Below the pieces are notes generated by a model. It saw only the letters and a program-made list of their open reading frames with translations. It searched no databases and was not told the DNA's origin. Shown here piece after piece: positions 35,911 through 51,775 of a stretch of DNA of 64,000 nucleotides; positions within the stretch are counted from its first letter, which is position 1, and each line of letters begins with the position of its first letter. A program made the translations under genes and the position numbers. Where the stretch lies: the NCBI GenBank assembly GCA_001179505.1, contig CDMY01000677.1, forward strand, positions 236,753-300,752. The letters are read 5' to 3'. Origin of the DNA: Vitrella brassicaformis CCMP3155 (lineage: Eukaryota; Protista; Chromerida).

Positions 35911-37446
35911 TCAGAGCTCGAGCTTGACAGTGCCGCCCTCCGACACGCCGACCGACTCGGACCCCTGAGCCAAATCAACCTGACCCTGCGCAGCACAGGA
36001 GGGCAACGCAGCACCCATTCTTCGATGTGCGCATGCAGTAGTTTGTCCTCACTGACCGTGTTGGAAGCGTCCATGTCCAACTCGATCTTCTCGCCGGGTT
36101 TGAACGCTGGTTGACCTGCGAGCCAGCCAACACGCAGCAAGAGGTCGGGATTTATTGCATGCATACGAACTGAAAGTCTGCGCACCTTTGTATGGGCACC
36201 CTGCGCACCGGAAGGCGTCACCCAAATAGCACTGCACAGTGCATGAACCACAGCAACCCACACATGTGATCGTCTGCAATCATTGTGCTTCCATCTGTCA
36301 TGTCGCTATCCTTCGGGCGTACGTTGCCGCAGGACGACCTGACGCCGCCAGTCTCGAGTTTCTTCTTGGCCTCCTCCGCCCCGATTTTCTTCTCCAGCTC
36401 GGCCCGCCCACACGTGCAGTTGGCGCACGCCTTGGGCTTGGACGCACAACTCTCCTTGCCTGATGGACGGGGAAGGACATCGGCCGATGGACACACACAC
36501 ACACACATGTAAGACACACACATGAACATGAGGCATGGCGTGTTTGGTGTGAAGTGTTGGCTGACTGACTGACCGGCTCCGAGTGGTTTGTACTCCTCTT
36601 TGTCGTCGATGAGGGAGCTCTCGTCGATCAACTCCTCCTCACCGGGGCTGTCGACTGACAACCAATACACACACACACACACACACACACGACGCATGAA
36701 GGGATGAAGGGATGGCGTGACACACCGCATTGTACACAGCGCATCACTGCTCACTTTTGACGGCCGTGGCGGCGCCCAGGTCCCAGTCCGGCTTCTTGCA
36801 CACAAACTGACCCACATGGCGCCAAAAGCACAGACACACTCGATGGAACACTCTGTGTGGCGGTTGTCGGAGTGTGCTTCTTCTCTCACCTGCACGATGA
36901 ACTGTTTGTTGTCAGCCGAGTCCCTCCTGGACACATCGCCGTCGATGAACCCGGCGTACATCGCGTTCTTGCTCACCCCCTCTATGAAACCATCAGCCTG
37001 AACATCATACACACACACACACACACGGCACGTCAGTCATCCCTCTGCCCTCCCCTCGGCTCTGCTCTTGCTTACGTCGTCGACAACACATTGGACGGTG
37101 CAGTTGCCGCCCGGTTTGAGTGCTGTGAAGCAGCTGGTGAGGAAGACCAAATCCAGCGGCAGCGTCCCCTTGGTCGCGTAGCACGACACGCCCTCAAACT
37201 GATCACGGTAGCCTACAACACACACCACGCCACACAGCCCACACCGGGAGAGAAGAGAATCAACCAACAGCCAGCCATTGTGTTGTGTCTGGTCGTGTGT
37301 TGGCGCTCACCAGCAGTGGCGATGGCTTCTGGTTCGATGACCGTTGCGTTTGCGGCCCTGTAGTTCTTGATGAGCTGCCCGCAGCCCTCGTCGCCCGCCG
37401 ACGCCACCACCAGCAGACGCCCTTTGAAAATCGACGGCAGGTGCAT
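35911..37446 (-). CDS. DRE2: Anamorsin/Dre2 (CIAPIN1) cytosolic Fe-S assembly protein
   Basis: Degenerate N-terminal methyltransferase-like part (ALKPGG), acidic linker EEELIDESSLID, and the motifs SCASKPKACANCTCG and SSCGN|CYLGDAFRCAGCPYKG|QPAFKPGEKI. Confidence 0.92.
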
Positions 37447-37747: not shown

Positions 37748-39317
37748 ATGATTGAGGCCACAGGCGATTCGTGGATGACGGGGTACGTGTCGCGTGGCGA
37801 CGCCGAAGCCCTGCTGATGGTGGGAGGCTTCGCGGCCACTATCCTGGTGGTCCGGATGAAGCCTATGGTCTTCACCTACGTCTGGTGAGCGCCTGTGCAT
37901 AGCTGGGGATGCATTCGTGTCTCAAAGTGACAGGGAGGAGGCAGTCAGGTGCTCTGCTCCCACGAGGTCTCTGTCTTTCTGTGTGCTCTGTGTGTTCAGG
38001 TTGGCTCATGCGATTGTGGCGGTGTGGCTTCAGTCAGATGTGGCGATTGGGATGGCTATTGTGGTCGGCCTGTGCATCAACATCGGCTGGTACTCCATCC
38101 AGCTCCACCGACAAATGGTGCAAACACACAGTCACACACACACACACACGTATCATCCACAACGTTCGTCCTCTTGTGTCTGTCTGCCAGGTGTGGGATG
38201 CTCTTCTGCCGTATTGGGTGAACTCGCTGGGTCTGGACCGTTCCACGGTGTCGCTGCTGTGTCGGCTGGGCGACATCATGCTGCACCCGGTGCCGCTGCT
38301 GTACCTCATCTACCACTTCAACCACACCGTCAAGCCACACATGGCCGTGGCCGCCTTCGTCCTCACACGGGGGTACCACGTCTGTGTGGAGGGGCACTTC
38401 TTCGGCCCCGGCGACAAGCTCAACTCCATCTACGCATTTGACCCACCGCTGCCACGGGCGATCTTCTTCACTGGTGAGTGAGCCACGGAGGGAGAGGGAG
38501 AGGGAGAACCATCTCATCTGTGCCGGTGGATATATATTGCTGCCTTGTGTTGTGTGTGTCAGGTTACTACTACGAGCTTCTGGCGCTGTCTCTGGTTGGG
38601 CAGGGTGCGATCGAGGAGCCATCGCTCCGCCTCATGACCCGCATGTTCACCATCGCCGTGGGGCTGACCTTCCTCATCCAGTCCTCCGACTGGCTCATCG
38701 TCCACCAATGGCTCGCACACCCCACAATCGCACAGCTCTGCCGGCGGCGGAAGCGATCGCACATTCAGCAGCAGCAACAGCACGGCGAGGCCACCACCGA
38801 GGACAGCGACAGCAGGGAGACGGACGAGCAGCTGCTGGACGCCATTCGGTCGTCGGCCAGCCGGCTGCTGGATCGGCTGCCGCCCAAGGCTGCGGAGAGG
38901 CTGCGTGTGGTGCTCCAGTCGGTCATGGCGTCGGGCATCGCCATGCGCGACAAGCTCATCCTCATGAACGACATCAACCAGGCCATCGCCGTGCTGTCCT
39001 CGCTCCCTCTCCCCCTCGCAGAGGTCTCCGACCGGATGGTGCTCTTCGCGCGGGTGAGCATGCACCGGCTGACCAACCTGATCAACGAGAGGAAGGCCTC
39101 GTTCAGCCTCCCGTCGCCTCCGGCCTTCCCCCCGCTGCCGACCTTCGTGAGCCTGAGCAGTGTGGACTTCGATCGTCTGCGGAGCGCCTTCACGCGACGC
39201 AAGAAGTGCATGTCCCGCTGCACGTCGTTCCTGTCCTGCCTCGGGGAGGACGACGCGGCCTTCGCATCGTCCATGGAACAGATGTGGCAGGAGCACATCA
39301 GTAGGAGCGGCGACTGA
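37748..39317 (+). CDS. Uncharacterised multi-pass membrane protein with a C-terminal helical cytosolic domain
   Basis: Several hydrophobic exons (ALLMVGGFAATILVVRMKPMVFTYV, GDIMLHPVPLLYLIY, MFTIAVGLTFLIQSS) followed by a long open last exon (38562-39317). No family recognised. Confidence 0.55.
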
Positions 39318-41193
39318 CGGGGACTGACAACATCGGGTGATTGATAATACAGCAGAGCAGATCGTGCAGTTGCTGGACTGGCTGATGGGGGGATGGGTGG
39401 GTGGAATTGCATCGAGGGATGGAATGTGTAAACTAGGAATGGGCGGGCGGACGGATGGCTGGATGGCGTGTACATACGGACGATGTGGCTGGTGGACGCC
39501 GAGGGAGAGACTAATTGACTGATTGATTCGTCGACTCAGGCAGACAGACACAGAGAGAGAGAGAGAGGTGTCGCTCTTTTTCGTCCGTTGATCCCGTTTC
39601 TGGCTGTTGTTTGTTGGTTTGTTTGAGGCTTGTCATGCCTGCCGTGTGCATGCCTGGGTGGGTACGTGGTGTGGTGGACACGGCATGCATGACATTTGAC
39701 ACACACGACAGACACATTTAGTGTGCAGTGCGGTGCAGCGACCCTTCTATCTATCATCACAGCGAATGCAGTGAGTGCAGTGAGTGAGTGCTTCTTGCCT
39801 GCTTGCTTAACACCTACCTGCCCAGTGTGCGCCCGTCGGCCTGCGTCCGAGTGCACGCAGCAGGCCGGCTGGCACAGCTGGGTGTACATAGCTAGCTCCT
39901 TAGGTTACTTGCTACCTGCCTGTCTGCCTACTGACTAACTCCAGACACACAGTGCGTGAGCCTGTGTGCGTACGTACCGGAGAGAGGACAACACTTTGCC
40001 TAGCCTTTGTGGCTCGTGTCCTTCTGTTTGGAGCAGTCGCCGCAGATGCTTGGTGTGCTGTCCTGCAACCGACGGCACACACTGCCTCGGCGGCGAGTGC
40101 GAGAACCAGAAGGATGGGACCCAGCAGACTTGCTCGTGACTACTGACAGACAGACAGACAGACAGATAGGCATTACACAGACAATAGCTCACAGAGAGCG
40201 GCAGATACACACACACACACACCCATCCAGAGAGAGGATGCACCAGCCAGCCCTGCTTTGCTTAGCCTACCTGTGGCGTTGCATTGCAGTGGTTGGCGTG
40301 TTACTTGTGTGGTCAGTACGAGTACGTGCTTCGGAGCCGTGCGTGCCTCGCAGCTTTCTTCGCTACTACCAATGACTGCAGTCACGAATGGGATGGGGAG
40401 GGATGAGGAGGACGAGTGGATGATGCTACGGGTGCTGTTTTCTTGGTGGCTGGTTGTTTAGTGCAAGAAGGCAGGGTTTTTCCTGTTGGTTTTGCTATGG
40501 TGACTGACTGCCCGACTCGCATCTTGCCTTCTTTGCGTCTTGCTGTTGAGTTTCCGTGGGGCTGGGGAGCTGCTCACACATGACACACATAACGCCACGA
40601 CAACACACGGATCTTTTTGTGACTCGGCAGGGCCCTCATGAGCCGTGCCTCTCCTCTCTCATCTCACACTGCTAGCCTTTGTGGGGGAATTTGTGTGGAT
40701 GTACGTGTTCGTATTCATTCATTCATTCATACCGGTCTGGATGCGCACACGCACGTGCGTGCATCTGCGAGTCTGATGAGCCAGAGCCAGCCAGGCAGCA
40801 CCAAACTGGTGTGTTGCATTGCTGACTGCATGCTTGCGCATCGGGAACCGATTGCCATGCCATGCATGTTGTGATCCACCTGTCTGATACGCAAAGCTGA
40901 TGAATCCATCAACAAGAACTCGCATCGATCAGCATCGATCAGCAATGAGTGAACCAGCAGATGACGAAGTCTGGTAAGACAACTTGAATGTAGCTCGTAC
41001 AGATCTCTACCAAAGAAAGCCCCTTCAAGTTCAAATCTGGCTGTCCTCTTCGAGTGACATCGATTGCCGTCTCGAGCTTGCAGCCAATCAAATTCCGCGA
41101 ATGGAATCCGTGAAACCGTTCGCGATCGGCTGACTCAGAGAAATCTCGTTGCTTCTCACCCTCCAGAATCGTTGTACTCCCACCGCCGCCAAG

Positions 41194-43647
41194 ATGAAGT
41201 ACCAGTGTAAGCAATGGCAGATCCATGCATTGCATGCACTGCGACCACAACGCAATCATGAGTGTGGTGGTCCACACGGGCTGTGCTGTGCATGTGTTTG
41301 CAGGCAGCTTCAAGAGCGCCAAGGACATGGCGCAGTACATCAAGGCGGAGGGCATTGAGCTCATCGATGCCGTCTTCTGCGACCCCCTGGGACTGTGGCA
41401 CCACTGCACCTTCTGCCCCAACCAGGTAAGCAGCGAGGCAGGGAGATCTGATGCCCGCCCACACACAAGACACACAGGGGGAGGCGGGGAGGGGCAGATC
41501 TGCACATGCGGCGCCTCTTGATGGGTGCTGGTGTGTCTCGTGTGTTTCGTGTGTGAGTGCGCAGGTTGAGGAGGATGACATCAAGGACGGCCTGCCCTTC
41601 GATGGCTCGTCCATCAGGCTCTTCTGCTCCATCGAGAACTCTGACATGGCCATGGTCCCCGGTGAGGCAGGCGTCTTGTGTTGTCCACCTGTTGTCTTGT
41701 CTTCTCACTCACCTGACCGCTGCGCTGCCTGCCTTGTGTGTCGCCTTCCTTCATGTCAGATCCGTCATCGTGCTGGATCGACCCGTTTTGCGACCGCAAG
41801 ACGCTGCACGTGACATGTTCGATCAAGAACCCCCAGACCAACCAGGGCTTTGCGAGGGACCCGCGGTCGGTGGCCGCCAGGTGCCTCGAGTTCGTCAAGA
41901 AGGAGGGCATCGCCGACACGGTCAGCCAGCCCATGACATGAGGGGGGATGCCTGCCGCCAGGGCAGGGCAGGGGTCGACTGTCTGCCTGTGGTTTTATGT
42001 GGTGCTCGTGTGCTGTGCTGTGCAGATCATCATCGGTCCGGAGGCTGAGTTTTTCATCTTTGACGACGTCAAGTACGGCGTGAGCAACAATGAGATGTTC
42101 TTCAAGGTCGACGGCGTCGAGGGATACTGGAACACCGGATGTACGATATATGTCACCAACACACACTACACAACGCAATATATGGGTTATCGCTTTCCTC
42201 TGTCTGTGGTGTTTGGTGTGTGGTGTGAGTGCAGCTGAGCAGGGTGGCGCCAACTTGGCCCACCGTGTGCCGCCCAAGAACTGGTACTTCCCCGTGCCGC
42301 CCATCGACACGACCATGAACCTCCGAGGCGAGATGCTCCTCACAATGGGCGACATGGGCGTCCCCATCGAGAAACACCACCACGAAGTCGCGTAAGCGCC
42401 AACACACACCACACAGAGGGATAGACGGAAAGGTGAACTCCCCCCCCTCATGTCATGTGTGTGTCGGTGTGTGTTGCTATCCCTCTCAAGTACGTGCCAG
42501 AGTGAGTTGGGTTTCACGTGCCGGCCGATGATAGAGTGTGCGGACATGCTGATGACGTACAAGTACGTCATCAAGAACGTGGCGCGGAAGTACGGCAAGA
42601 CGGCCACCTTCATGCCCAAGCCCATCTTCGGCGACAACGGCACCGGCATGCACGTCCACCAGTCCCTCTGGAAGGACGGCAAGCCGCTCTTCTTCGACGA
42701 AAACGGAAAGTAGGCTAAGCTCTCCGACACACACTGGAAGGGCCGTTGCATCTCTCTCTCTCTGTGTCTGGTGGTTGTGTGTGTGTGTGGTGTAGGTACG
42801 TCAAGTTGAGCCAGATGTGCACTCACTACATCGGCGGTCTGCTGAAGCATGCCCCCGCCGTGCTGGCCTTCACCAACCCCGCCGTCAACTCATACAAGCG
42901 TCTCGTGCCAGGCTTCGAGGCCCCCGTCAACCTCTGCATGTCAAAGGTGCCTCTGTCTCTGTCTGTCTGTCTGCACACTTGACAGAGGGCCGGTGTCTGT
43001 CAAACACTTCGTTCTCTTTGCGTGTCATGTGTGTGTCTGCAGGGCAACCGATCTGCCGCCGTGCGCATTCCGATGTACAAGCCAGACAACCCGAAGCAGA
43101 AGCGTCTGGAGTTCCGCTGCCCCGACCCCTCCTGCTGCCCATACCTCGCATTCGCAGCCATGGTCATGGCGGGCATCGACGGTACGCACTCTGCCACTCA
43201 CACACATGCAGCATAGATCATCCATCCGTCCTTCATGCGCCCATCTCTGTCTGTCTATTGTGTGTGTTGTATGTGTGTAGGCATCAAGAACAAGATCGAG
43301 CCGCCCCCTCCCTGCGACTTTGATATCTACGAGCTGTCCGAGGAGGAGAAGGCCAAGATGGGACTCAAGTCGACTCCCGGCAGTCTCGCAGAAGCACTGG
43401 TAAGACACAGACAGACGATGCGAGAGAAGCCCAGGCTCGTCTACAGGACACGTGTGTGTATTGTGTGTGCTGTGTGGTGTGTGTTGTGTGTCAGGATGCG
43501 CTGGAGGCCGACCACTCCTTCCTGACGGCGGGCGGTGTGTTCACAGAGGACTTCATCCAGGCGTACATCGAGTGGAAGCGCAACGAGTACCTCATGGTGG
43601 CCACCCTGCCGCACCCCAAGGAATACGAACTCTACTTCCAGTGCTGA
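41194..43647 (+). CDS. glnA: Glutamine synthetase type I (bacterial GSI-beta-like)
   Basis: [77 protein letters not shown] and [19 protein letters not shown] across about 13 in-frame exons. Confidence 0.97.
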
Positions 43648-44842
43648 TCGACCATACGACACACGGATGGATGGACCGATCCCATCCGATCACACATGCT
43701 CACTCATTCCTTTACTTACTACTTACCACATGCCTGACTGCCTGCCTGTCTGCCTGCTGCACGTTGTGTGTGCTGTGCCTGTCGTGTGAGTGGTGTGTGG
43801 TGACGCATTTGGCCCTTTTGACCGACCGAACAAACCACTGACTGAGGGAAGAGACGGCTGAGAGACTGCATGTGTCAGTTTGGTTGTAGTCGGTCTGCCC
43901 ACCCATCGTCTGCATGCTCGTCTGTCTGTCTGTGTGTGGCGTCCACTCCACTCCACTGGATCACTGGATGTTTTCTCGGCCTGCTTGAGTCAGCGAGGCG
44001 TGGGTTTTTTCCCCGCCGTCCCCCACATAGCGGGCACGCTGACCGATGCTCCTGATCGATGCTGGTGTACCTACCTCCATACATACACACACACGCATAC
44101 ACGCCTTCCTTCACGTTAGGTCAGTCAGTTATGGTTTGCCTTCGTTGCCTGCCTGCAGCAACAGACATGGTGCCATCGCATCCCGTGTGCGTGACGCTGA
44201 ATGAGGATAAGCACACGCATCGACGGCCGGCAGAGACGTGCTGGTCGTGGATAGGTGGGCTTCTCCCGTATGAAGCAACGCGCACACGAGATCAGGTCAC
44301 TTGGTCATTACGCGTACGGTCACATGGATGTGCTCTCACCTTGCCACCATTACAGTGCTCGCTCGTGTCTGACTCTGTAGGATGCTGGTACCTCAGGGCC
44401 GGGGCATCCCCTGTCATCAGGTGGACGCTCAGAGCCTGTTGCATGCCGGCGTCAGATGGTGTCAGACCGAGTGCGCTGCTGGCTGGTTCATGTGCTGCAC
44501 GACTTGCCTTGTTGTCCTCATTCAGTTTTCGCCTCGGCCGCCTGGGAATAGGCGCCATGCTTGCTCGCTGATTGACTGATGATTCGATGTGTGCGCGTCA
44601 GCAATCCAGACATCTGGCGTCTTTTTGCTTCGATGACTCGTTTATTTCATGCCCGTCTGCATGCTGTGTGTCGTGTATGCGTGTGTATGCTGGTGTGTGA
44701 GTCGAGAATACCCCTCACACACACAGATGGAGAGAGAGAGAGATGACTCGCTGCGTGAGCTGAGTTTTACAGCGCAGTGGGTTGAGTGAGGTGAGTGTCG
44801 GTCTGTCTGCCATGCCGGCTGGAGCACCAAGGTGAGCTGCTG

Positions 44843-44879
44843 TGTGTGGTGTGGTGTGGTGTGGTGTGGTGTGTGGTGA
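44843..44879. repeat. (GTGTG)n pentanucleotide microsatellite, one example of the abundant TG/CA/GACA/TCTG tracts in introns and intergenic DNA
   Basis: gtgtggtgtggtgtggtgtggtgtggtgtgtgg. Similar (TG)n, (CA)n and (GACA)n runs occur in most introns. Confidence 0.9.
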
Positions 44880-45365
44880 GATGAGACTGTCCGCAGCTCT
44901 TCGATGCACAGGCTTTTTCCGCTGTGCCGAGCTGATAATGTGATGCATCACACTGATGGACCGATGGATGGATGGAGTGTTTTGCGTGACGCTCGATTGA
45001 GTGATTGCATCCCATGGCCATGTGGTGTGCGTGGACAGCTTTTATCTCAAGTGCGGTGCGCATGGTGCTGCCCCGACCACACACTTTCGTCACTCACACC
45101 GGCCGAGGCAGATGAGGGTTGTCTCAGATCCACGGCCGAAATCTGTCACCAATTCATTGCAACGCAGTCGCCTGGAGCGCTGGCATTGCCTGCAAAGCAG
45201 ACAGGCCGTTGAAAAGGCGGCGCGATCGGAATCGCTTGCGCGCTAAGCTCGAGGCGATCTCCCCCAACTGACCTGGCGCTTCGAGTCAATCAGCCTCGGT
45301 CGTTCCATCATCGGAGCCCTCTGATGCGAGGAAGGGAAAGCAGAGGCACGCGAGGGGTGGGTGCG

Positions 45366-47704
45366 ATGTTCGCAGCAGCGTCATCCTCATCGTATCACCC
45401 GGCGGAGGACCAGCAGGCCGCTGCTGGCGCTGCTGGTACCGGCACATGGCCAAACGCAGTGGTGTTTGACCAACACCACCAGGTGGGGAATGGAGGGCCA
45501 TCCAGAGGGCGAATGGAGGGCCATCGAGAGGGCCATCGAGATGTGCGCTGTCTTGTTGCGGGTGTGTGCGTGTCTGCACAGATGATGCCAGCGTCCTCGT
45601 ACGGTCAGCAGCAGTTGATTATCCCACGGTAAGCGACACCGCACACATGTCCGTAGTGTGGTGCGTGTTTGTCCATGGCGATGTATCTGTCTGTCTGTCG
45701 CGTGCAGGCCCCTCTTGCCAACGCTCTCAACCCCAGAGGTAGGTATGCCTGGCCAGTACCATTGATCAGAAGCTGCCCGGTCGGTCGACCGACGATGGGT
45801 TCGATGTGCGGCGTTGGTGACATCCATCAGATGCCGGCCCATCTTGGTCAACTGTTTCAGTCCTGGGTGTCGTCATCCGGCTTCCTCGCCATGGACGCCT
45901 GGCACGTCGACCCACAAACACACGAGTGCCGATACCTCAGAGAGTGAGCACAGCACCGCCTCCGCCACCAGGAGAGGGCGACAATCAATGAGTGGCGACA
46001 TGTGGCTTGTGTTGCGTCAGGTGTCACATCGAGGCTCGGCCAGAGTTGGTGCCGTGGATGGTCGAGTCGTGTGGATTCGTATTCAACAGGGGAGAGGTGA
46101 GTGAATGAATGGGTCACCGGAGGGCTGGGACACACAGACATACACACAGAAACAGGCAAGCCGCCAACGCCGCTGGTGTGTGTGTTGATGTGTTGCAGGG
46201 CATGCCAGGTCGTGTGACGGCCACTTGCCAGACAGAATACTCGCCGCACCTGCCCTACTCACACCAAGTCACTACACTGCACACAGAACCCATCACACAC
46301 ACACACACACACACCTCATACCCTTGTTCTTGTTTCGTGTGCGCCAGAACGGTCGTCCCTTTCTGCGATACAAGATGGCCTGCAAGCTGGGCATCACATC
46401 GGCACTCGGCATCCCACTGGTGGACCGCTCGGCCAAGGTGCGATTCGTCGTCGCCTTCTACGGCGGACCCAATGCCGCCTCGGCACAGAGGTGTGTAAGG
46501 GGACCGACACATGAGGCTGGCCGTTGATGGATTCATTCATTCACCTGTCTGTGCATGTGTATGCAGCGATGTGTCGAGTGTGGTCCGGGCTGTGCAGTCC
46601 CACCCACAGCTCGGTGACTGGCTCGCTGTGGCTGCTGGTGAGCAACAGACAGACAGAAAGACCATAGGGCGACAGACAACTAGTGCCGACCGAACTCCCT
46701 CTGTTGTGTCCATTCATTCTTGCAGACCACTGTCCCAACAGGAGCCGAAAACGGCTCCCCGTGGCCAGAGAGGTACCTGACCACCGACACACACAGAAAC
46801 ACAGAGACACATGTGCCGGCCATGCCCACGGAGTAATGTCCTTGTATCTGTTCAGTCACATGGTTCGGTGGACTCTGACGACGATAGTGGTCCGAAGCGG
46901 CGGCGTGGCGGGGGCGGGGACACCCGCCCTGCCGCCAGCGGCAAGTGTCCACACAAAGGGGACGAGTGCTGCGATTGCAGCCAATGCCTCAGGTGAGAGA
47001 GGTACATACATACACACATGCAGCTCCTTGGTCATGTCATGGATGTCGGTGTACTCGTGTCTTGGCTGGCCTGCCTGCCTCTTGTGTGCGTGCAGGATCC
47101 GTCGCAATCGCGAGTACAGCCGTCGGGAGCAGCGGCGACGGAGGGAGGCGCTCGAGGCGGTCGGGCCGCTCAGGGCGGCACTGCATGCCGTCGAGGAGAA
47201 ACTCGAGGCCAAGGACGCAGAACTGAGACAAAAGGTATATACTCACAACCAAACACACCCATTCACGCTGACAGACCACACGTCACTCTTTCTTCCCCTT
47301 ATATGTGCTGTCCACAGTCTCAGGAGATCGCGATGCTGCACCAGTTCTTGGGAAGACTGCAGCAGCAGCACCAGCCTCAGCCTCAGCCAGCAGCGGCCAC
47401 CAACACGCAGATCGGGCAGGACTTCCTCACTCCCTCACCAATCGTCGAGTCCCTCCTGTCCGACACCCAATTCTACGCCACACCCTCACCAGCCCCATCA
47501 CCAGCAGCGCCACCGCCGGCAGACCTGTTCAATGACGGCAGCAAGATCGTCGATGTGACCGATCTCGACCTGGACACCACCGAGCGGCGATGGTCAGTGT
47601 CGCCGGGCCTGTCACAGGACTGCGTTTCGTCGAGCAGCAGCGACTTGGCGCCACCACTGATGCTGCCGGGGCTGCTGGCGGGGGCGGGCCATCTGGGGAC
47701 GTGA
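45366..47704 (+). CDS. Putative transcription factor: GAF domain + Cys/His cluster + bZIP-like basic-zipper region
   Basis: Exons 45861-45943, 46021-46096, 46199-46267 and 46348 onward splice in frame to AMDAWHVDP...ESCGFVFNRGEGMPGRVTATCQTEYSPHL...PFLRYKMACKLGITSALGIPLV...VRFVVAFY (GAF). This is followed by CPHKGDECCDCSQCL|RIRRNREYSRREQRRRREALEAVGPLRAALHAVEEKLEAKDAELRQK|SQEIAML. Confidence 0.72.
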
Positions 47705-49172
47705 CATCATTTTTGTGTCGCGAATATATGAATTTTTTGTCACCCACTCACTCATTCACTCATTCACTCATTCACTCACTCACGTGTATCCGGCTGCTTT
47801 TTTGTGCCAGCTGTGGCGGGCCCGTCGAGATCGACAAGCCCATCTGGTTATTTTGCCAACAAGTGATTTTTGCTCTCTGGGTTCTCGTCGGTGTATGATA
47901 TACGGGGGGGGACTGCTGCACACGTGTGTGTATGTATACCTGTTTACGGGTGTGTGTATGTCTGGGTGGGTGGATGGGATCGCTTGTGCCTATGGATGGA
48001 TGTGTCGGCCGGAATCATGATCTTCGGACGGCTGGTGCGTAAGTTGACGGTCGGTCGGTTTGTTGATTGCGTCTCCTTCTGTGTGCGCCACGTTGTACGG
48101 CATCGTTGATGGCCCTTCTGCGGTGCGCCAGCGATGTGCAGCACCAGGAGCGCCGTCGACAGCGCTGTCGAACGTTGCCACACATGACAGGAAAAGCACT
48201 CAGTAAGACAAAGGGAAAAGCGTACCGTTGACAGTCTTTTTCTCGGCCCTGTGTGTGGAGCTGAGCTAATGGGAGCCATCGATGGTTGTCCGTGTGCATG
48301 TCTCTCGCCTTCTTTGTTCCCTTGTGGTTTGTCCATGCGATCGCGGCCTTCTTGGCCGGCTACTCGTGTTGACAATGAGCACGACGTAGGCAGCCTGGTG
48401 GGCGTCTGTCGACTGGATGACCACGAGGTGGATCAGGACTTGTGAGTGGAGCGGGAGACATACAGTACGTGTTGCATGTGTTGGGGCAAAGCGCAGATTG
48501 ACGGGACTCGTCAACTCTGCGTCCATTGCAATGCAGCACGGCTGCTGCTGCTGGTGCTGGTTGGTGGGGTGGGGTGGGGTGGGGGGTTGCGTGTGTCTCT
48601 AAGAGAGGACGTGTCGGCTCTGGTGTGTTGCGCTCGTGGTGCTGTTTCGATGGTGTGCGGTGTGGTACTTGTGAGTAGAGAAAATGGCTGTAGGCTTTGT
48701 ATCATTTATCCTGTCGGTCGGTCGGTCGGTAGACATATGTCGGTATTGTGTACGTGTGGTGTGGTAAGTGTCGCGACAGCGTTGAGTGTGTGTGGACCGT
48801 CTGTCTCCTGGTGACCGTTGACTCGTGATCGAAGTAACACGTCAGTCGATCGAGCTCGTGATCGACCAGCATTTGCCGCAACAGAGAAGCTCTGTCTTCG
48901 CGTAGACGTATTCTACTCGCTAACGCAGCTACCAACACAGCCATTTTCACACACACACACACACACACACAATGAGAGCGCACTCGCATCAGCGCAGAAC
49001 ACACGAATTGAAGAAAGTGACGGCCAGGTAGAGAGCGGCTAGACAGCCTTGCGCACACGCACGCTACTGACATCCAGAGCAGAGCCTGCATAGAGCTACC
49101 TACGCGTTCGGCCACCAAGAAGCACAGCCCTTCTCTTCTCACATCCAACAGGCACACGCACATCCCATCCCA

Positions 49173-50386
49173 TCACTCGCCCCTGCCGAACAGCAGGAAG
49201 GCAGCAGCGCCCATGACCCGCTTCGCCACCTCACACGTCAGGGGGAATCGGTCAGCCCCCTCCATCCCACTTACTGGCTCCTCAGTCGTGTGCAAGGACA
49301 CAGAGCAGAAGTGACAGTCACGCATGATCAGCAGCTGCGCCGCATAAGTGTCGGTGCTCCTGTGACCGGAGAGGAAGATAAGGCGCCAGAGCGGCTGGCC
49401 CCAAGTGCAGGAAACGAAGTCCGCCTGGTGTGTGTCGGGGTGTGGCACGCCGCCGCCGTAGTGGACACCCACGTAGTCACCCGGCTCCGTCAGGTGCTTG
49501 ACGGCGGCCTTTTCCTCAGCGGTGTTGCCGCTCGTGAGCTCCCAGGCTGCCGTGTGCGCCACCGTGTGGCCTCGCGAACGCAGACTGAATGCATAACACC
49601 ACCGGACATTCGACCAACGAGCATGTGATGCGCAGTCATGTGTGTGTACCTCGTGTGCGTTGCGTACCCCCAGAGTATTAGGTCACGGCAGCAGCGAAAA
49701 TCCAGCCCAGCCCAAGCACCTGAACGACGACACACGCAAGGCCACAGTGCATTCGGAGCAGCCAGGCCGTCTTCATGGTCTCCCTCTCCCCCACCTGTGC
49801 ATGGAGGATCGGTCACGTCGAACATCTTCGCGAAGGGATGGTCCAAAGGGAGCGTCTGTGAGTCGTAGACCGTCAGGTGCAGCCCCTCCAGCCTCACTTC
49901 CCCGTCATTGCCCAGCTCCAGGGGCAGCCTCTCGCCAGACGCGTTCACCAGCCGATGGGCGAAGAGGGCGTACTGTCCCATGCTGACGGGGAGTCGGGCC
50001 AGCTGAGCCTTTGAAGGAAGCTGCCTGATGTCAGCTGGGGTGATGGTGAGGGGGAGGGAGTCGATGAAGCCGTAACACTTGGCGAGCGAGAGGATCGTCG
50101 TCCACGCCTTCATCTCCCCTTTCTCCAGTACGTGAAGCAGCCGGATCATCTGCGCCACACCCCCGGCGCCTTCCGGCGTCCTGTGGGACAAGACAGGCTC
50201 CCCCATGGCGCGGAGGACTACATCGATTCGCCCCCTCGTGAACATCTCGATGCTGACATGGTTGTTGCGGCTCCCCAGGGCGGTGAGGAGCGGACACAGA
50301 TCCTCGGCAGCGGGCAGGAAGTCACCCACACGACAGAACAGTTCAGACGGGAGGGAAGCCAAAGTTGGAGAGGGGGCCTCCGCCAT
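49173..50386 (-). CDS. Lineage-specific uncharacterised protein with an F-box-like N-terminus (paralog of 5784-7000)
   Basis: MAEAPSPTLASLPSELFCRVGDFL (F-box-like), QTLPLDHPFAKMFDVTDPP and RLIFLSGHRSTDTYAA...LHTTEEPVSGMEGADRFPLTCEVAKRVMG. Confidence 0.65.
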
Positions 50387-50645: not shown

Positions 50646-51775
50646 ATGTCCAAGCCTTCTCCCCGTGTGGTGCTGGTGAGATCTCTCACACACGGCAAAT
50701 GAATACAGGCGAGCACGTGAGCGCTGCATCTCAGCGCAATTGGATGTATGTGTGTGTTGCAAGGTGACTGGAGCCAGTGGCGGTATTGGCAACGCGGCGG
50801 CCATCGCATTCGCGGAGAAGGGCGACACTGTGGCCGTCCATTACTCGGGCAAGCGTATAGCAAACTATCTTCTCGCGTCATGCAGCATCCATGCACGTGT
50901 GTGTCTTTCGCTGATTTCCAGCTAGCGAGGCCAAGGCCAAGGCGACGCTCGAGGCCGTCGAGAAGGCGGGCGGCAGCGGGGCCCTCTTCCAAGCCGACCT
51001 CTCACGCGTCAGTGAGATACGACGGCTCTACGATGAGGTGGGGTGTGTTGGGACGGGATCTGAGGCCGTCCTTTCATTCTTGGTTGTGTTGTGTTGTGCA
51101 GGTGTATGCTCGGTTCGGCCGTGTGGACGTAGTGTTCAACAACAGTGGCGCGGGAGCGGAGGCACTTATACAGGACACATCAGAGGAGCAATATGACAGG
51201 TAGTTGTGCATGGTGAATGCAAGCCGCTGTCCTAATGAATGAATGAATGAATCGATGGCTTCTTCTCTCCCTCTCCCTCTTCCTGCATTCTCTTAGAATG
51301 TTTGATCTTAACGTCAAGGGCACGTTCTTCTCGCTGCAGGAGGCCATCAAGCGCATGGGCCAGGGGGGCGTCATCATCAACAACAGCAGCGTCCTCGGCA
51401 GCCACCCCATGGCCACCACTGGGTGCTACTGCGGCAGCAAGGCGGCGGTCTCCATGCTCACCAAGTGTGCCGCCAAGGAAGCCGGTGAGAAGGGCATCCG
51501 AGTCAACGCTGTCGCCCCTGGGCCAGTGCTGCCTGGTGAGTCAGTCTGGATCCGCGTTCAATCATTGTCTGTCTGTGTGGAGCGTGTGTTTGTGTGATGT
51601 GATACATGCAGGTATGGTGGGAGAGGATATGGTGAATCGGATGGTGAATCTGTCTCCCTTCAAGAGGATCGGCGAGGCGATGGAGGTGGGCCGGCTGTGT
51701 GTGGCCATCGCCAGCGACGACATGAGCTGGGTGTCGGGTCAGATTATCGGCGTCGACGGGGCGGCATTCTGCTGA
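50646..51775 (+). CDS. Classical short-chain dehydrogenase/reductase (FabG-like)
   Basis: MSKPSPRVVL|VTGASGGIG (TGxxxGIG), VFNNSG, IINNSS, YCGSK (YxxxK), GIRVNAVAPG and VSGQIIGVDG. Confidence 0.92.

What the first reader, a model, noticed from the sequence alone, without database searches (positions are those of the whole stretch)
45366..47704. NLP-like GAF sensor fused to a bZIP-like DNA-binding module, directly downstream of glutamine synthetase
Seen: four exons splice in frame into a GAF domain with the F..GEG(M)PGRV...EYSP...F.R...A...GI...LGIP pattern. It is followed by a compact Cys/His cluster (CPHKGDECCDCSQC) abutting a basic region (RIRRNREYSRREQRRRR) and a leucine/valine heptad coil. 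Established: this GAF motif occurs in plant and algal NIN-like proteins, where the GAF-like region senses nitrate but is coupled to an RWP-RK domain, not a bZIP. Inference: this is a differently wired ligand-responsive transcription factor. Its position as the next gene after glnA, on the same strand, suggests a nitrogen-sensing/assimilation pair in a chromerid. The basic region has N-x7-Q rather than the canonical N-x7-R/K, so DNA specificity may be non-standard.
Basis: partly seen in the sequence, partly recalled or inferred. Interest (0 to 1): 0.78.

Follow-up and report, generated by a model that had tools for sequence, protein, structure and literature searches.

The report
GAF sensor fused to atypical bZIP
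This is a real 12-exon gene of the alga Vitrella brassicaformis that joins a GAF signal-input domain to an unusual cysteine-capped bZIP-type DNA-binding module, a domain combination I found only in this species, but nothing beyond adjacency ties it to the neighbouring glutamine synthetase gene.

Summary
Twelve GT..AG exons (45324/45366-47704, + strand) splice in frame into a protein identical to an annotated, uncharacterised protein of Vitrella brassicaformis CCMP3155.

- **GAF domain (residues 80-236).** The AlphaFold2 model has pLDDT 90.8. Foldseek gives 198 PDB hits, and those listed are GAF or GAF-like folds. The domain is homologous to both GAF domains of a plant NLP (hhalign 98% and 97%). 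Bacterial sensor and brown-algal GAFs are at least as close.
- **C-terminal module.** It belongs to an apparently undescribed alveolate bZIP subfamily found in colponemids, Paramecium and Vitrella. The subfamily has a C-x7-C-x-C-x2-C cluster, an invariant N-x7-Q, and an "EAL..IGP" junction with a 3-residue heptad shift.
- **Fusion.** Among 1.84 billion representative proteins, only this protein and one Vitrella paralogue carry both parts. Shared intron positions show that one fused gene was duplicated.
- **Nitrogen link.** Type I glutamine synthetase is the upstream neighbour (41194-43647), 1.7 kb away. The paralogue is not next to a glutamine synthetase, and no ligand evidence exists, so nitrogen sensing remains conjecture.

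Verdict: a new variant of a known kind, a signal-domain-coupled transcription factor. Interest is moderate.

The parts
45324..47704 (+). Whole coding region of the GAF-bZIP gene. It has 12 exons and encodes 472 aa from ATG 45324, or 458 aa from ATG 45366. The stop codon is at 47702-47704.
   Evidence: In-frame splice model. Identical to the annotated protein P0001.
45831..46637 (+). GAF domain, residues 80-236, exons 4-8 (45831-45943, 46021-46096, 46199-46267, 46348-46490, 46567-46637). It contains GEGMPGRV (split by the 46097-46198 intron) and FLR..A..LGI..LGIP.
   Evidence: AlphaFold2 pLDDT 90.8. Foldseek: 198 PDB hits at E<=1e-3, the listed ones GAF or GAF-like folds. Profile against PDB: EGL3 7.6e-10, Nlh1, PDE6, NreA. 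hhalign to a Welwitschia NLP: 98.2%.
46895..46906 (+). KRRR basic patch (residues 266-269), conserved in the paralogue. It may be a nuclear localisation signal (inferred).
   Evidence: Alignment of P0001 and P0002; coordinates.
46946..46987 (+). Cysteine cluster CPHKGDECCDCSQC. Subfamily pattern C-x7-C-x-C-x2-C: C283 (present in 13 of 15 members), and C291, C293 and C296 (invariant).
   Evidence: C291, C293 and C296 are invariant in 15 family members. AlphaFold2 block pLDDT is about 93, and the helix starts inside the cluster.
46991..47144 (+). Basic region RIRRNREYSRREQRRRR (residues 298-314), interrupted by the intron 46993-47095. N302 is at 47106-47108 and Q310 at 47130-47132.
   Evidence: The family profile hits the CREB bZIP 1dh3 at E=4e-4. 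Pfam bZIP_1 matches 5 of 15 relatives, best 26.4 bits.
47151..47359 (+). Conserved LEAVGPL junction followed by a coiled coil of about 6 heptads (residues 317-358), interrupted by the intron 47235-47317.
   Evidence: Heptad table. AlphaFold2 predicts one continuous helix with pLDDT 95-99.
47360..47701 (+). Gln/Pro-rich and acidic C-terminal tail (residues 359-472). It may be an activation region (inferred); it is poorly conserved in the paralogue.
41194..43647 (+). Upstream neighbour: type I glutamine synthetase (GlnA), 481 aa, multi-exon. It ends 1,677 bp before the annotated start of the transcription factor gene.
   Evidence: Gene call with Gln-synt_N and Gln-synt_C. Pfam E=2e-111. TIGR00653 443 bits against a cut-off of 429.

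Best explanation
The gene encodes a nuclear transcription factor whose activity is probably controlled through a signal-input domain.

- DNA-binding end: a member of an alveolate-specific, divergent bZIP subfamily. A four-cysteine cluster, probably a zinc- or redox-dependent cap, sits five residues before a basic region with N-x7-Q. A conserved EAL..IGP junction follows, and then a dimerising coiled coil of about six heptads.
- Origin of the fusion: other members of the subfamily, including a third Vitrella gene, carry a different, weakly EF-hand-like N-terminal domain. In the lineage of this gene a GAF domain of the GxGLPGRV subtype stands in that place. The fused gene then duplicated.
- Likely mechanism: binding of a small molecule or a partner protein to the GAF domain changes DNA binding, dimerisation or localisation of the bZIP part, as in NLPs and in plant MYC/EGL3 bHLH factors.

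Shown: the gene structure, the GAF fold and its homology, membership of the Cys-bZIP subfamily, and the restriction of the fusion to two Vitrella paralogues in the libraries searched.

Inferred: metal binding by the cysteines, dimeric DNA binding, regulation through the GAF domain, and the nuclear role. The ligand and the target genes are unknown.
For: - Gene model: in frame, and identical to the annotated protein.
- One fused gene: intron positions from the GAF domain through the bZIP are shared with paralogue P0002 on another contig.
- Exhaustive HMMER search of 1.84e9 representatives: only P0001 and P0002 match the whole profile. The other hits fall into a GAF-only set and a Cys-bZIP-only set.
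- GAF: 41 of 46 hits match Pfam GAF_2 and 27 of 46 match GAF_NLP. Profile hits in the PDB are EGL3, Nlh1, PDE6 and NreA. The AlphaFold2 model has pLDDT 90.8, and the listed Foldseek hits are GAF or GAF-like folds. hhalign to an NLP gives 98.2% and 97.1% for its two GAF domains, and 90.8% with the Vitrella-only profile.
- bZIP: the module is found in colponemids, Paramecium and Vitrella P0022 at E down to 5e-16. C291, C293, C296, N302, R303, Q310 and A316 are invariant. Pfam bZIP_1 is the recurrent DNA-binding match, up to 26.4 bits. The best PDB hit is the CREB bZIP, followed by GCN4, Jun, ATF2 and TGA7. UniRef names P0002, P0022 and P0029 'BZIP domain-containing'. AlphaFold2 predicts one helix through the basic region and the coil.
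- Domain replacement: P0022 and colponemid P0003 are collinear over a different N-terminal domain plus the Cys-bZIP.
- Recurrent theme: the same GAF subtype is fused to RWP-RK (NLP P0071), C2H2 fingers (protist P0020) and HTH_10 (haloarchaeal P0046).
Against: - The window protein itself matches no Pfam GAF or bZIP model even at E<=10. The best bZIP_1 scores of its relatives are below the gathering threshold.
- Four of the five canonical base-contact positions are changed: N,Y,S,E,Q against N,A,A,S/C,R. One change puts a glutamate where canonical bZIPs have Ser/Cys. DNA binding may therefore be weak, altered, or dependent on a partner.
- The hydrophobic core fits a register shifted by 3 residues from canonical bZIPs, at a Gly-Pro.
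- I found no transcript-derived copy, so splicing rests on the annotation and on conservation in the paralogue.
- No ligand, metal or DNA-binding data exist.
Confidence: 0.6

Rival explanations
1. The GAF domain is a protein-protein interaction or oligomerisation surface, not a small-molecule sensor. The N-terminal GAF-like domain of plant MYC/EGL3 bHLH factors works this way, binding JAZ or MYB partners. Regulation would then come from a partner protein.
For: The best solved-structure relative of the GAF profile is EGL3 in complex with MYB partners (7fdl, E=7.6e-10). MYC3-JAZ complexes also hit. Pfam bHLH-MYC_N matches 41 of 46 relatives.
Against: Most sequence relatives are bacterial multi-sensor kinases and cyclic-di-GMP enzymes, where GAF domains usually bind small ligands. 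Ligand-binding GAFs (PDE2A, Lcd1-cAMP, NreA) match the model just as well.
Confidence: 0.25
2. One reading: a nitrate- or nitrogen-sensing transcription factor that forms a functional pair with the adjacent glnA and regulates nitrogen assimilation.
For: Type I glutamine synthetase is the immediate upstream gene on the same strand. The GAF domain is homologous to NLP GAF domains. NLP7 binds nitrate through its N-terminal region (PMC11062454). The NLP7 GAF domain is needed for the nitrate-dependent response (PMC9310391). NreA is a weak sequence and fold match.
Against: Adjacency of separately transcribed eukaryotic genes in a compact genome is weak evidence. Paralogue P0002 is not near a glutamine synthetase. 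I found no ortholog in another species, so synteny cannot be tested. The motif is shared by hundreds of non-nitrogen GAF proteins. Identity to NreA is only 11-12%. The two promoter regions share no distinctive element.
Confidence: 0.1
3. The protein no longer binds DNA by itself. It acts as a regulated heterodimer partner or inhibitor of the canonical-type family member P0022, or of P0002.
For: P0001 and P0002 replace the family's S-A...A/S base-contact residues with Y/L-S...E, while P0022 keeps the family consensus. The coiled coil is conserved among the three Vitrella proteins.
Against: The basic region stays very arginine-rich. N302, R303 and Q310 are invariant. The basic region is almost identical in the two GAF paralogues, which suggests selection on a DNA-contacting surface.
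Confidence: 0.15
4. Annotation artefact: two adjacent genes, a GAF protein and a small bZIP, have been merged by gene prediction.
For: I found no transcript-derived sequence. The linker exons 8-10 encode low-conservation sequence.
Against: All 11 introns are short, uniform GT..AG introns, and the frame is kept throughout. An independent locus on another contig has the same architecture and the same intron positions. No stop codon or plausible start separates the two parts.
Confidence: 0.04

Closest known systems
Plant NIN-like proteins (NLP; GAF_NLP + RWP-RK + PB1), e.g. AtNLP7
   Same: An N-terminal GAF domain of the GxG[LM]PGRV subtype is coupled to a C-terminal DNA-binding domain. Homology is direct: hhalign gives 98.2% and 97.1% to the two GAF domains of a Welwitschia NLP. 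The Vitrella-only profile shows 35% identity over 52 columns.
   Different: One GAF domain instead of two in tandem. No RWP-RK and no PB1. The DNA-binding module is bZIP-type. Neither the window protein nor its paralogue reaches Pfam's GAF_NLP threshold. No evidence for nitrate binding.
Plant bHLH factors with a MYC_N (GAF-like) domain: MYC2/3, EGL3/GL3
   Same: A GAF-like N-terminal regulatory domain is fused to a dimeric basic-helix DNA-binding module. EGL3 is the best solved-structure relative of the GAF profile (7fdl, E=7.6e-10) and a top Foldseek hit.
   Different: Their DNA-binding domain is bHLH, not bZIP. MYC_N binds partner proteins (JAZ, MYB). Identity is only about 14%.
Canonical bZIP factors (CREB, GCN4, Jun/ATF; Pfam PF00170)
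   Same: An arginine- and lysine-rich basic region with the RRNR..SA-type core in relatives, followed at once by a heptad coiled coil. One continuous helix is predicted. CREB is the best PDB sequence hit, and bZIP_1 is the recurrent Pfam match in relatives.
   Different: The invariant Arg/Lys at N+8 is Gln. There is a Cys4 cluster directly before the basic region, and a conserved IGP with a 3-residue register shift at the basic/zipper junction. In this gene the contact residues are N,Y,S,E,Q. All Pfam scores are below threshold.
Sensor-domain bZIPs of other protists: aureochromes (bZIP+LOV) and bZIP-PAS factors of stramenopiles (from my own knowledge, not tested here)
   Same: The same logic: a small sensory domain and a bZIP in one polypeptide.
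   Different: The sensor there is LOV or PAS, not GAF. The bZIP is canonical. The lineage is different.
Bacterial GAF sensor proteins (PAS-GAF histidine kinases, GGDEF/EAL, HD-GYP) and ochrophyte GAF proteins (e.g. Ectocarpus CBN79690)
   Same: These are the closest sequence relatives of the GAF domain, with the same GxGLPGRVW...FLR...A...G[LI]....G[VI]P signature.
   Different: Their outputs are kinase or cyclic-di-GMP domains, or none, rather than a eukaryotic DNA-binding module.

Membership tests
GAF domain superfamily | GAF fold (antiparallel sheet flanked by helices) | tested here: met
   AlphaFold2 pLDDT 90.8, pTM 0.88. Foldseek gives 198 PDB hits at E<=1e-3, and the listed ones are GAF or GAF-like folds with TM about 0.6. 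Caveat: the model's alignment was built from GAF relatives.
GAF domain superfamily | Significant sequence-profile match to GAF families | tested here: met
   The Vitrella-only profile retrieves about 80 GAF proteins at E<=1e-3 in 1.84e9 sequences. Of 46 scanned, 41 are Pfam GAF_2. The PDB profile hit is 7.6e-10.
GAF domain superfamily | Pfam gathering threshold reached by the protein itself | tested here: not met
   P0001 has no GAF-family hit at E<=10. Paralogue P0002 scores 19.5 bits for GAF_NLP (cut-off 24.1) and 18.3 bits for GAF_2 (cut-off 28.6).
NIN-like proteins (NLP) | GAF_NLP-type N-terminal domain | tested here: inconclusive
   Homologous by hhalign (98.2%, 97.1%, 90.8%), and a Welwitschia NLP is retrieved at E=4e-4. 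But the match is below Pfam's threshold, and it is no closer to NLPs than to bacterial or ochrophyte GAFs.
NIN-like proteins (NLP) | RWP-RK DNA-binding domain | tested here: not met
   No RWP-RK hit in Pfam.
NIN-like proteins (NLP) | C-terminal PB1 domain | tested here: not met
   No PB1 hit. The C-terminus is a low-complexity Gln/Pro/acidic tail.
NIN-like proteins (NLP) | Nitrate binding by the N-terminal region | not testable with these tools
   This needs binding assays. At 11-12% identity to NreA, pocket residues cannot be inferred.
bZIP transcription factors (PF00170 / PS50217) | Basic region signature N-x7-[RK] | tested here: not met
   The signature is N302-x7-Q310. The Gln is invariant in all 15 family members.
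bZIP transcription factors (PF00170 / PS50217) | Profile match to bZIP models | tested here: inconclusive
   P0001 has no match. Relatives score 26.4, 25.9 and 19 bits for bZIP_1 against a cut-off of 27.6. The family profile hits CREB 1dh3 at E=4e-4. UniRef labels P0002, P0022 and P0029 as BZIP domain-containing.
bZIP transcription factors (PF00170 / PS50217) | Leucine heptads in fixed register directly after the basic region, on one continuous helix | tested here: inconclusive
   AlphaFold2 predicts one helix at pLDDT 95-99. V/L/L/L/I/L fall at N+18+7n. However, the a/d core fits a +3 register better (73% against 51% over the family), and there is a Gly-Pro at the junction.
bZIP transcription factors (PF00170 / PS50217) | Dimeric, sequence-specific DNA binding | not testable with these tools
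   This needs EMSA, SELEX or DAP-seq, or a multimer model with DNA.
Alveolate Cys-cluster bZIP subfamily (delimited here) | C-x7-C-x-C-x2-C immediately before [RK]RNR...Q...EAL..IGP and a coiled coil | tested here: met
   All elements are present in P0001. The Vitrella-only profile finds colponemid, Paramecium and Vitrella P0022 members at E=5e-16 to 7e-5.
Conserved glnA-regulator gene pair | Linkage kept in paralogues or orthologues | tested here: not met
   The P0002 locus has no glutamine synthetase within 10 kb. No orthologue was found in another species for comparison.

The most novel reading that the evidence does not exclude
The protein is a two-input switch. A metabolite binds the GAF domain, possibly a nitrogen-status signal such as nitrate, glutamine or 2-oxoglutarate. 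The zinc or redox state is read by the Cys4 cap on the basic helix. Together they gate a non-canonical bZIP (N-x7-Q, stammer at IGP) with a DNA specificity unlike any known bZIP, and the neighbouring glnA is a direct target. That would make it a chromerid counterpart of the plant NLP nitrate sensor, built on a different DNA-binding scaffold.
Probability: 0.06. Interest if true: 0.8.

Novelty: new variant of a known kind. Interest (0 to 1): 0.5.

Why it matters
- **Chromerid gene regulation.** Chromerids are the free-living photosynthetic relatives of apicomplexan parasites, whose transcription is thought to be dominated by ApiAP2 factors. A GAF-coupled bZIP shows that chromerids also have sensor-fused transcription factors, with a possible direct metabolite input.
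- **A recurrent evolutionary pattern.** The same GxGLPGRV GAF subtype has been attached independently to RWP-RK (plant NLPs), bHLH (plant MYC/EGL3), C2H2 fingers (a marine protist), HTH_10 (haloarchaea), and here bZIP.
- **An unstudied bZIP subfamily.** The alveolate-wide Cys-cluster bZIP subfamily appears not to have been described. It breaks two rules of the bZIP family: the invariant Arg and the fixed spacing between basic region and zipper. It is therefore a useful test case for how bZIP DNA recognition can be rebuilt.
- **No practical consequence is evident.**

Tried and rejected
- Pfam on the full protein and on each half gave no usable hit. Only the paralogue and the relatives gave weak hits.
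- A PDB sequence search with the two-sequence profile found nothing meaningful. Deeper profiles were needed.
- One MAFFT alignment of GAF fragments and bZIP fragments against the long query misaligned the last GAF helix onto the bZIP. I discarded it and folded the two domains separately.
- Foldseek with the Cys-bZIP model returned no hits because the model is a single long helix. This says nothing either way.
- A word-indexed search with the eukaryote-type GAF alignment returned only 22 mostly unnamed environmental fragments. The search with the bZIP module returned 43 short, unnamed fragments, mostly metagenomic, whose origin I did not determine, and no new architectures.
- A neighbour-joining tree of 40 GAF segments put the Vitrella pair in a loose clade with ochrophyte and other sequences I judged eukaryote-like. 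No sister was stable in 100 bootstraps, so the origin of the GAF domain is unresolved.
- A repeat search across 39300-45366 for elements shared by the glnA and transcription factor upstream regions found only CA/GT, CAGA and GA low-complexity tracts.
- Literature searches found no description of a GAF-bZIP protein and no bZIP or GAF discussion in the main text of the chromerid genome paper.
- Heme-regulatory 'CP' motif reading of KCPH: rejected, because the Pro is not conserved (CV, CA, CI, CK and CT in relatives).
Full report
**1. What is in the sequence**

The window comes from Vitrella brassicaformis CCMP3155. Between 45324 and 47704 on the + strand, twelve exons join in frame. All eleven introns are 76-103 nt and run GT..AG. 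The product is identical to the annotated protein P0001, which has 472 aa and is named "unnamed protein product" or "uncharacterized protein". The annotation starts at ATG 45324.

- GEGMPGRV, split by the intron 46097-46198.
- EYSP.
- FLRYKMACKLGITSALGIP.
- CPHKGDECCDCSQC, at 46946-46987.
- RIRRNREYSRREQRRRR, at 46991-47144 across an intron.
- A heptad coil, at 47160-47359.

Two small corrections apply: the GAF domain uses exons 4-8, and the gene has 12 exons.

**2. One gene or two?**

A paralogue, P0002 (712 aa, 47% identity), lies on another contig. It has the same order of parts and shares the intron positions from the start of the GAF domain through the zipper. It has one additional intron in the coil. 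A single fused gene was therefore duplicated, which argues strongly against an annotation merger. I found no transcript-derived copy, so direct RNA evidence is still missing.

**3. The N-terminal domain**

Pfam does not recognise the domain in P0001. P0002 gives sub-threshold hits to GAF_NLP (19.5 bits), bHLH-MYC_N and GAF_2.

I searched 1.84 billion representative proteins with a profile built from the two Vitrella proteins alone. It found about 80 proteins that match only the N-terminal part. Of 46 scanned:
- 41 match GAF_2.
- 41 match bHLH-MYC_N.
- 27 match GAF_NLP.

Most are bacterial PAS/GAF histidine kinases or GGDEF/EAL and HD-GYP proteins. The best-scoring relatives outside Vitrella come from ochrophyte algae (Phaeothamnion, Hapterophycus, Ectocarpus). 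Some of these reach the GAF_NLP threshold.

Other evidence agrees:
- A profile of 32 aligned domains hits EGL3 (7fdl, 7.6e-10), Nlh1, PDE6, MYC3 and NreA in the PDB.
- The AlphaFold2 model is confident, with pLDDT 90.8.
- Foldseek returns 198 PDB matches at E<=1e-3, and the listed ones are GAF or GAF-like folds.

A genuine plant NLP is among the hits of the Vitrella-only profile, at E=4e-4. It is from Welwitschia and carries GAF_NLP, RWP-RK and PB1. hhalign aligns the Vitrella-type profile to both tandem GAF domains of that NLP, at 98.2% and 97.1%. The two-sequence Vitrella profile aligns to the first domain at 90.8%, with 35% identity over 52 columns.

The resemblance to NLPs is therefore real homology. 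The motif, however, marks a broad GAF subtype rather than NLPs in particular, and it does not point to nitrate.

**4. The C-terminal module**

The same exhaustive search found a second, separate set of proteins that match only the Cys cluster, basic region and coil. They come from:
- colponemids, including Colponema vietnamica;
- several Paramecium species;
- a third Vitrella protein, P0022.

A word-indexed search added many short, unnamed fragments, mostly metagenomic.

The aligned module reads [K]C-x7-C-x-C-x2-C-x-[RC]-[IV]-R-R-N-R-x-S-A-[RK]-E-[SA]-Q-[RK]-K-K-[KR]-[ED]-A-L-x-x-I-G-P-L, followed by heptads. C291, C293, C296, N302, R303, Q310 and A316 are invariant. N-x7-Q is thus a trait of the subfamily.

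Evidence that the module is bZIP-related:
- bZIP_1 is the recurrent DNA-binding Pfam match, in 5 of 15 members. The best score is 26.4 bits, just under the 27.6 cut-off.
- The family profile's best PDB hit is the CREB bZIP (E=4e-4), followed by GCN4, Jun, ATF2, TGA7 and C/EBP.
- UniRef already labels three members as BZIP domain-containing.

HMMER aligns the family to CREB with a 3-residue gap at "xIG". My heptad count agrees: core hydrophobic residues occupy 73% of a/d positions in a +3 register, against 51% in the canonical register. In coiled-coil terms this is a 3-residue "stammer" at the junction between the basic region and the zipper.

AlphaFold2 predicts one uninterrupted helix from inside the Cys cluster to the end of the coil, at pLDDT 95-99. 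The Cys loop is also confident, at about 93.

In P0001 and P0002 the five canonical base-contact positions read N,Y/L,S,E,Q. The family consensus is N,S,A,A/S,Q, and canonical bZIPs have N,A,A,S/C,R. DNA specificity, or even autonomous DNA binding, is therefore uncertain. Zinc binding by the four cysteines is my inference from the spacing and from the C-x2-C at the N-terminus of the helix. I could not inspect the model coordinates.

**5. How the architecture arose**

P0022 and the colponemid proteins are collinear over a different N-terminal domain with weak EF-hand matches, followed by the Cys-bZIP. Paramecium shows a faint trace of the same region. Only P0001 and P0002 have a GAF domain in that position.

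The simplest reading is that the domain was replaced in the Vitrella lineage and the gene then duplicated. The source of the GAF domain is unresolved, because the neighbour-joining tree has no bootstrap support.

**6. The link to glutamine synthetase**

The upstream neighbour, at 41194-43647 on the + strand, is a type I GlnA. It ends 1,677 bp before the transcription factor's start codon. These are separate eukaryotic genes in a compact genome. The paralogue's neighbours are GCV_T-like, CRT-like and unannotated genes. No orthologue exists for a synteny test. The two upstream regions share only low-complexity repeats. The regulatory pairing is therefore a hypothesis without support beyond adjacency.

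**7. Mechanism and comparison with known systems**

The most likely reading is a dimeric nuclear transcription factor whose DNA-binding end is controlled through the GAF domain. Control could come from a small ligand, as in most bacterial relatives and as reported for NLP7 (PMC11062454, PMC9310391). It could also come from a partner protein, as in MYC/EGL3.

It works like an NLP or a MYC-type bHLH, but it is a member of neither. RWP-RK, PB1 and bHLH are all absent. It is at best a fringe member of the bZIP family, because the defining N-x7-R/K and the Pfam threshold are both not met. It is a clear member of the alveolate Cys-bZIP subfamily delimited here.

The same GAF subtype is also fused to other DNA-binding domains: C2H2 fingers in a marine protist (P0020) and HTH_10 in a haloarchaeon (P0046). 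The GAF-bZIP is thus one more instance of a recurrent design.

**8. Novelty and score**

The gene is already in public annotation, but uncharacterised. The library held no paper using the term GAF-bZIP or its variants, and my other searches turned up no description of the Cys-bZIP subfamily. I rate it a new variant of a known kind, with an interest of about 0.5. The architecture and the subfamily are real and somewhat surprising. The nitrogen-sensing story that made the finding attractive is unsupported.

Noticed in passing
Related proteins P0003, P0004, P0005, P0009 (colponemids), P0016, P0018, P0019, P0029 (Paramecium), P0022 (Vitrella): This is an alveolate-wide bZIP subfamily that my literature searches did not find described. 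It has a C-x7-C-x-C-x2-C cluster, an invariant N-x7-Q and a conserved EAL..IGP junction. Members usually carry a different N-terminal domain with weak EF-hand matches.
   Followed up: partly
window 41194-43647 (+): The glutamine synthetase is a bacterial-type GSI (TIGR00653 above its equivalog cut-off). It is encoded by a multi-exon nuclear gene of a chromerid. I did not examine its origin or targeting.
   Followed up: partly
P0071 (Welwitschia NLP), residues about 170-320 and 343-523: The plant NLP carries two tandem GAF_NLP-type domains, each with its own G-x-P-G-[RK] motif. Both align to the Vitrella-type GAF. Which one binds nitrate in NLP7 was not stated in the papers I read.
   Followed up: partly
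P0020 (MMETSP transcript, 648 aa); P0046 (Natrialbaceae archaeon, 1066 aa): The same GAF subtype is fused to C2H2 zinc fingers in a marine protist. It is also fused to BAT and HTH_10 domains in a haloarchaeon. These are further cases of this GAF subtype coupled to DNA-binding domains.
   Followed up: no
window 46290-46318 (intron 6) and 47739-47785 (3' of the stop codon): There is a (CA)n microsatellite inside intron 6. Just after the stop codon there is a run of CACTCATT-like short tandem repeats.
   Followed up: no
window 45489-45545 (intron 1): There is a near-tandem duplication of a unit of about 25 nt (GAATGGAGGGCCATC.AGAGGGC) inside the first intron.
   Followed up: no
window 39500-44900: Introns and intergenic DNA around glnA are rich in CAGA, GT/CA and GA low-complexity tracts. 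These account for all the repeat families found there.
   Followed up: yes
window 49173-50386 (-) and 37748-39317 (+): Two annotated neighbouring genes (351 aa and 430 aa) have no Pfam family on record. The other neighbours are CIAPIN1 (35911-37446, -) and a short-chain dehydrogenase (50646-51775, +).
   Followed up: no
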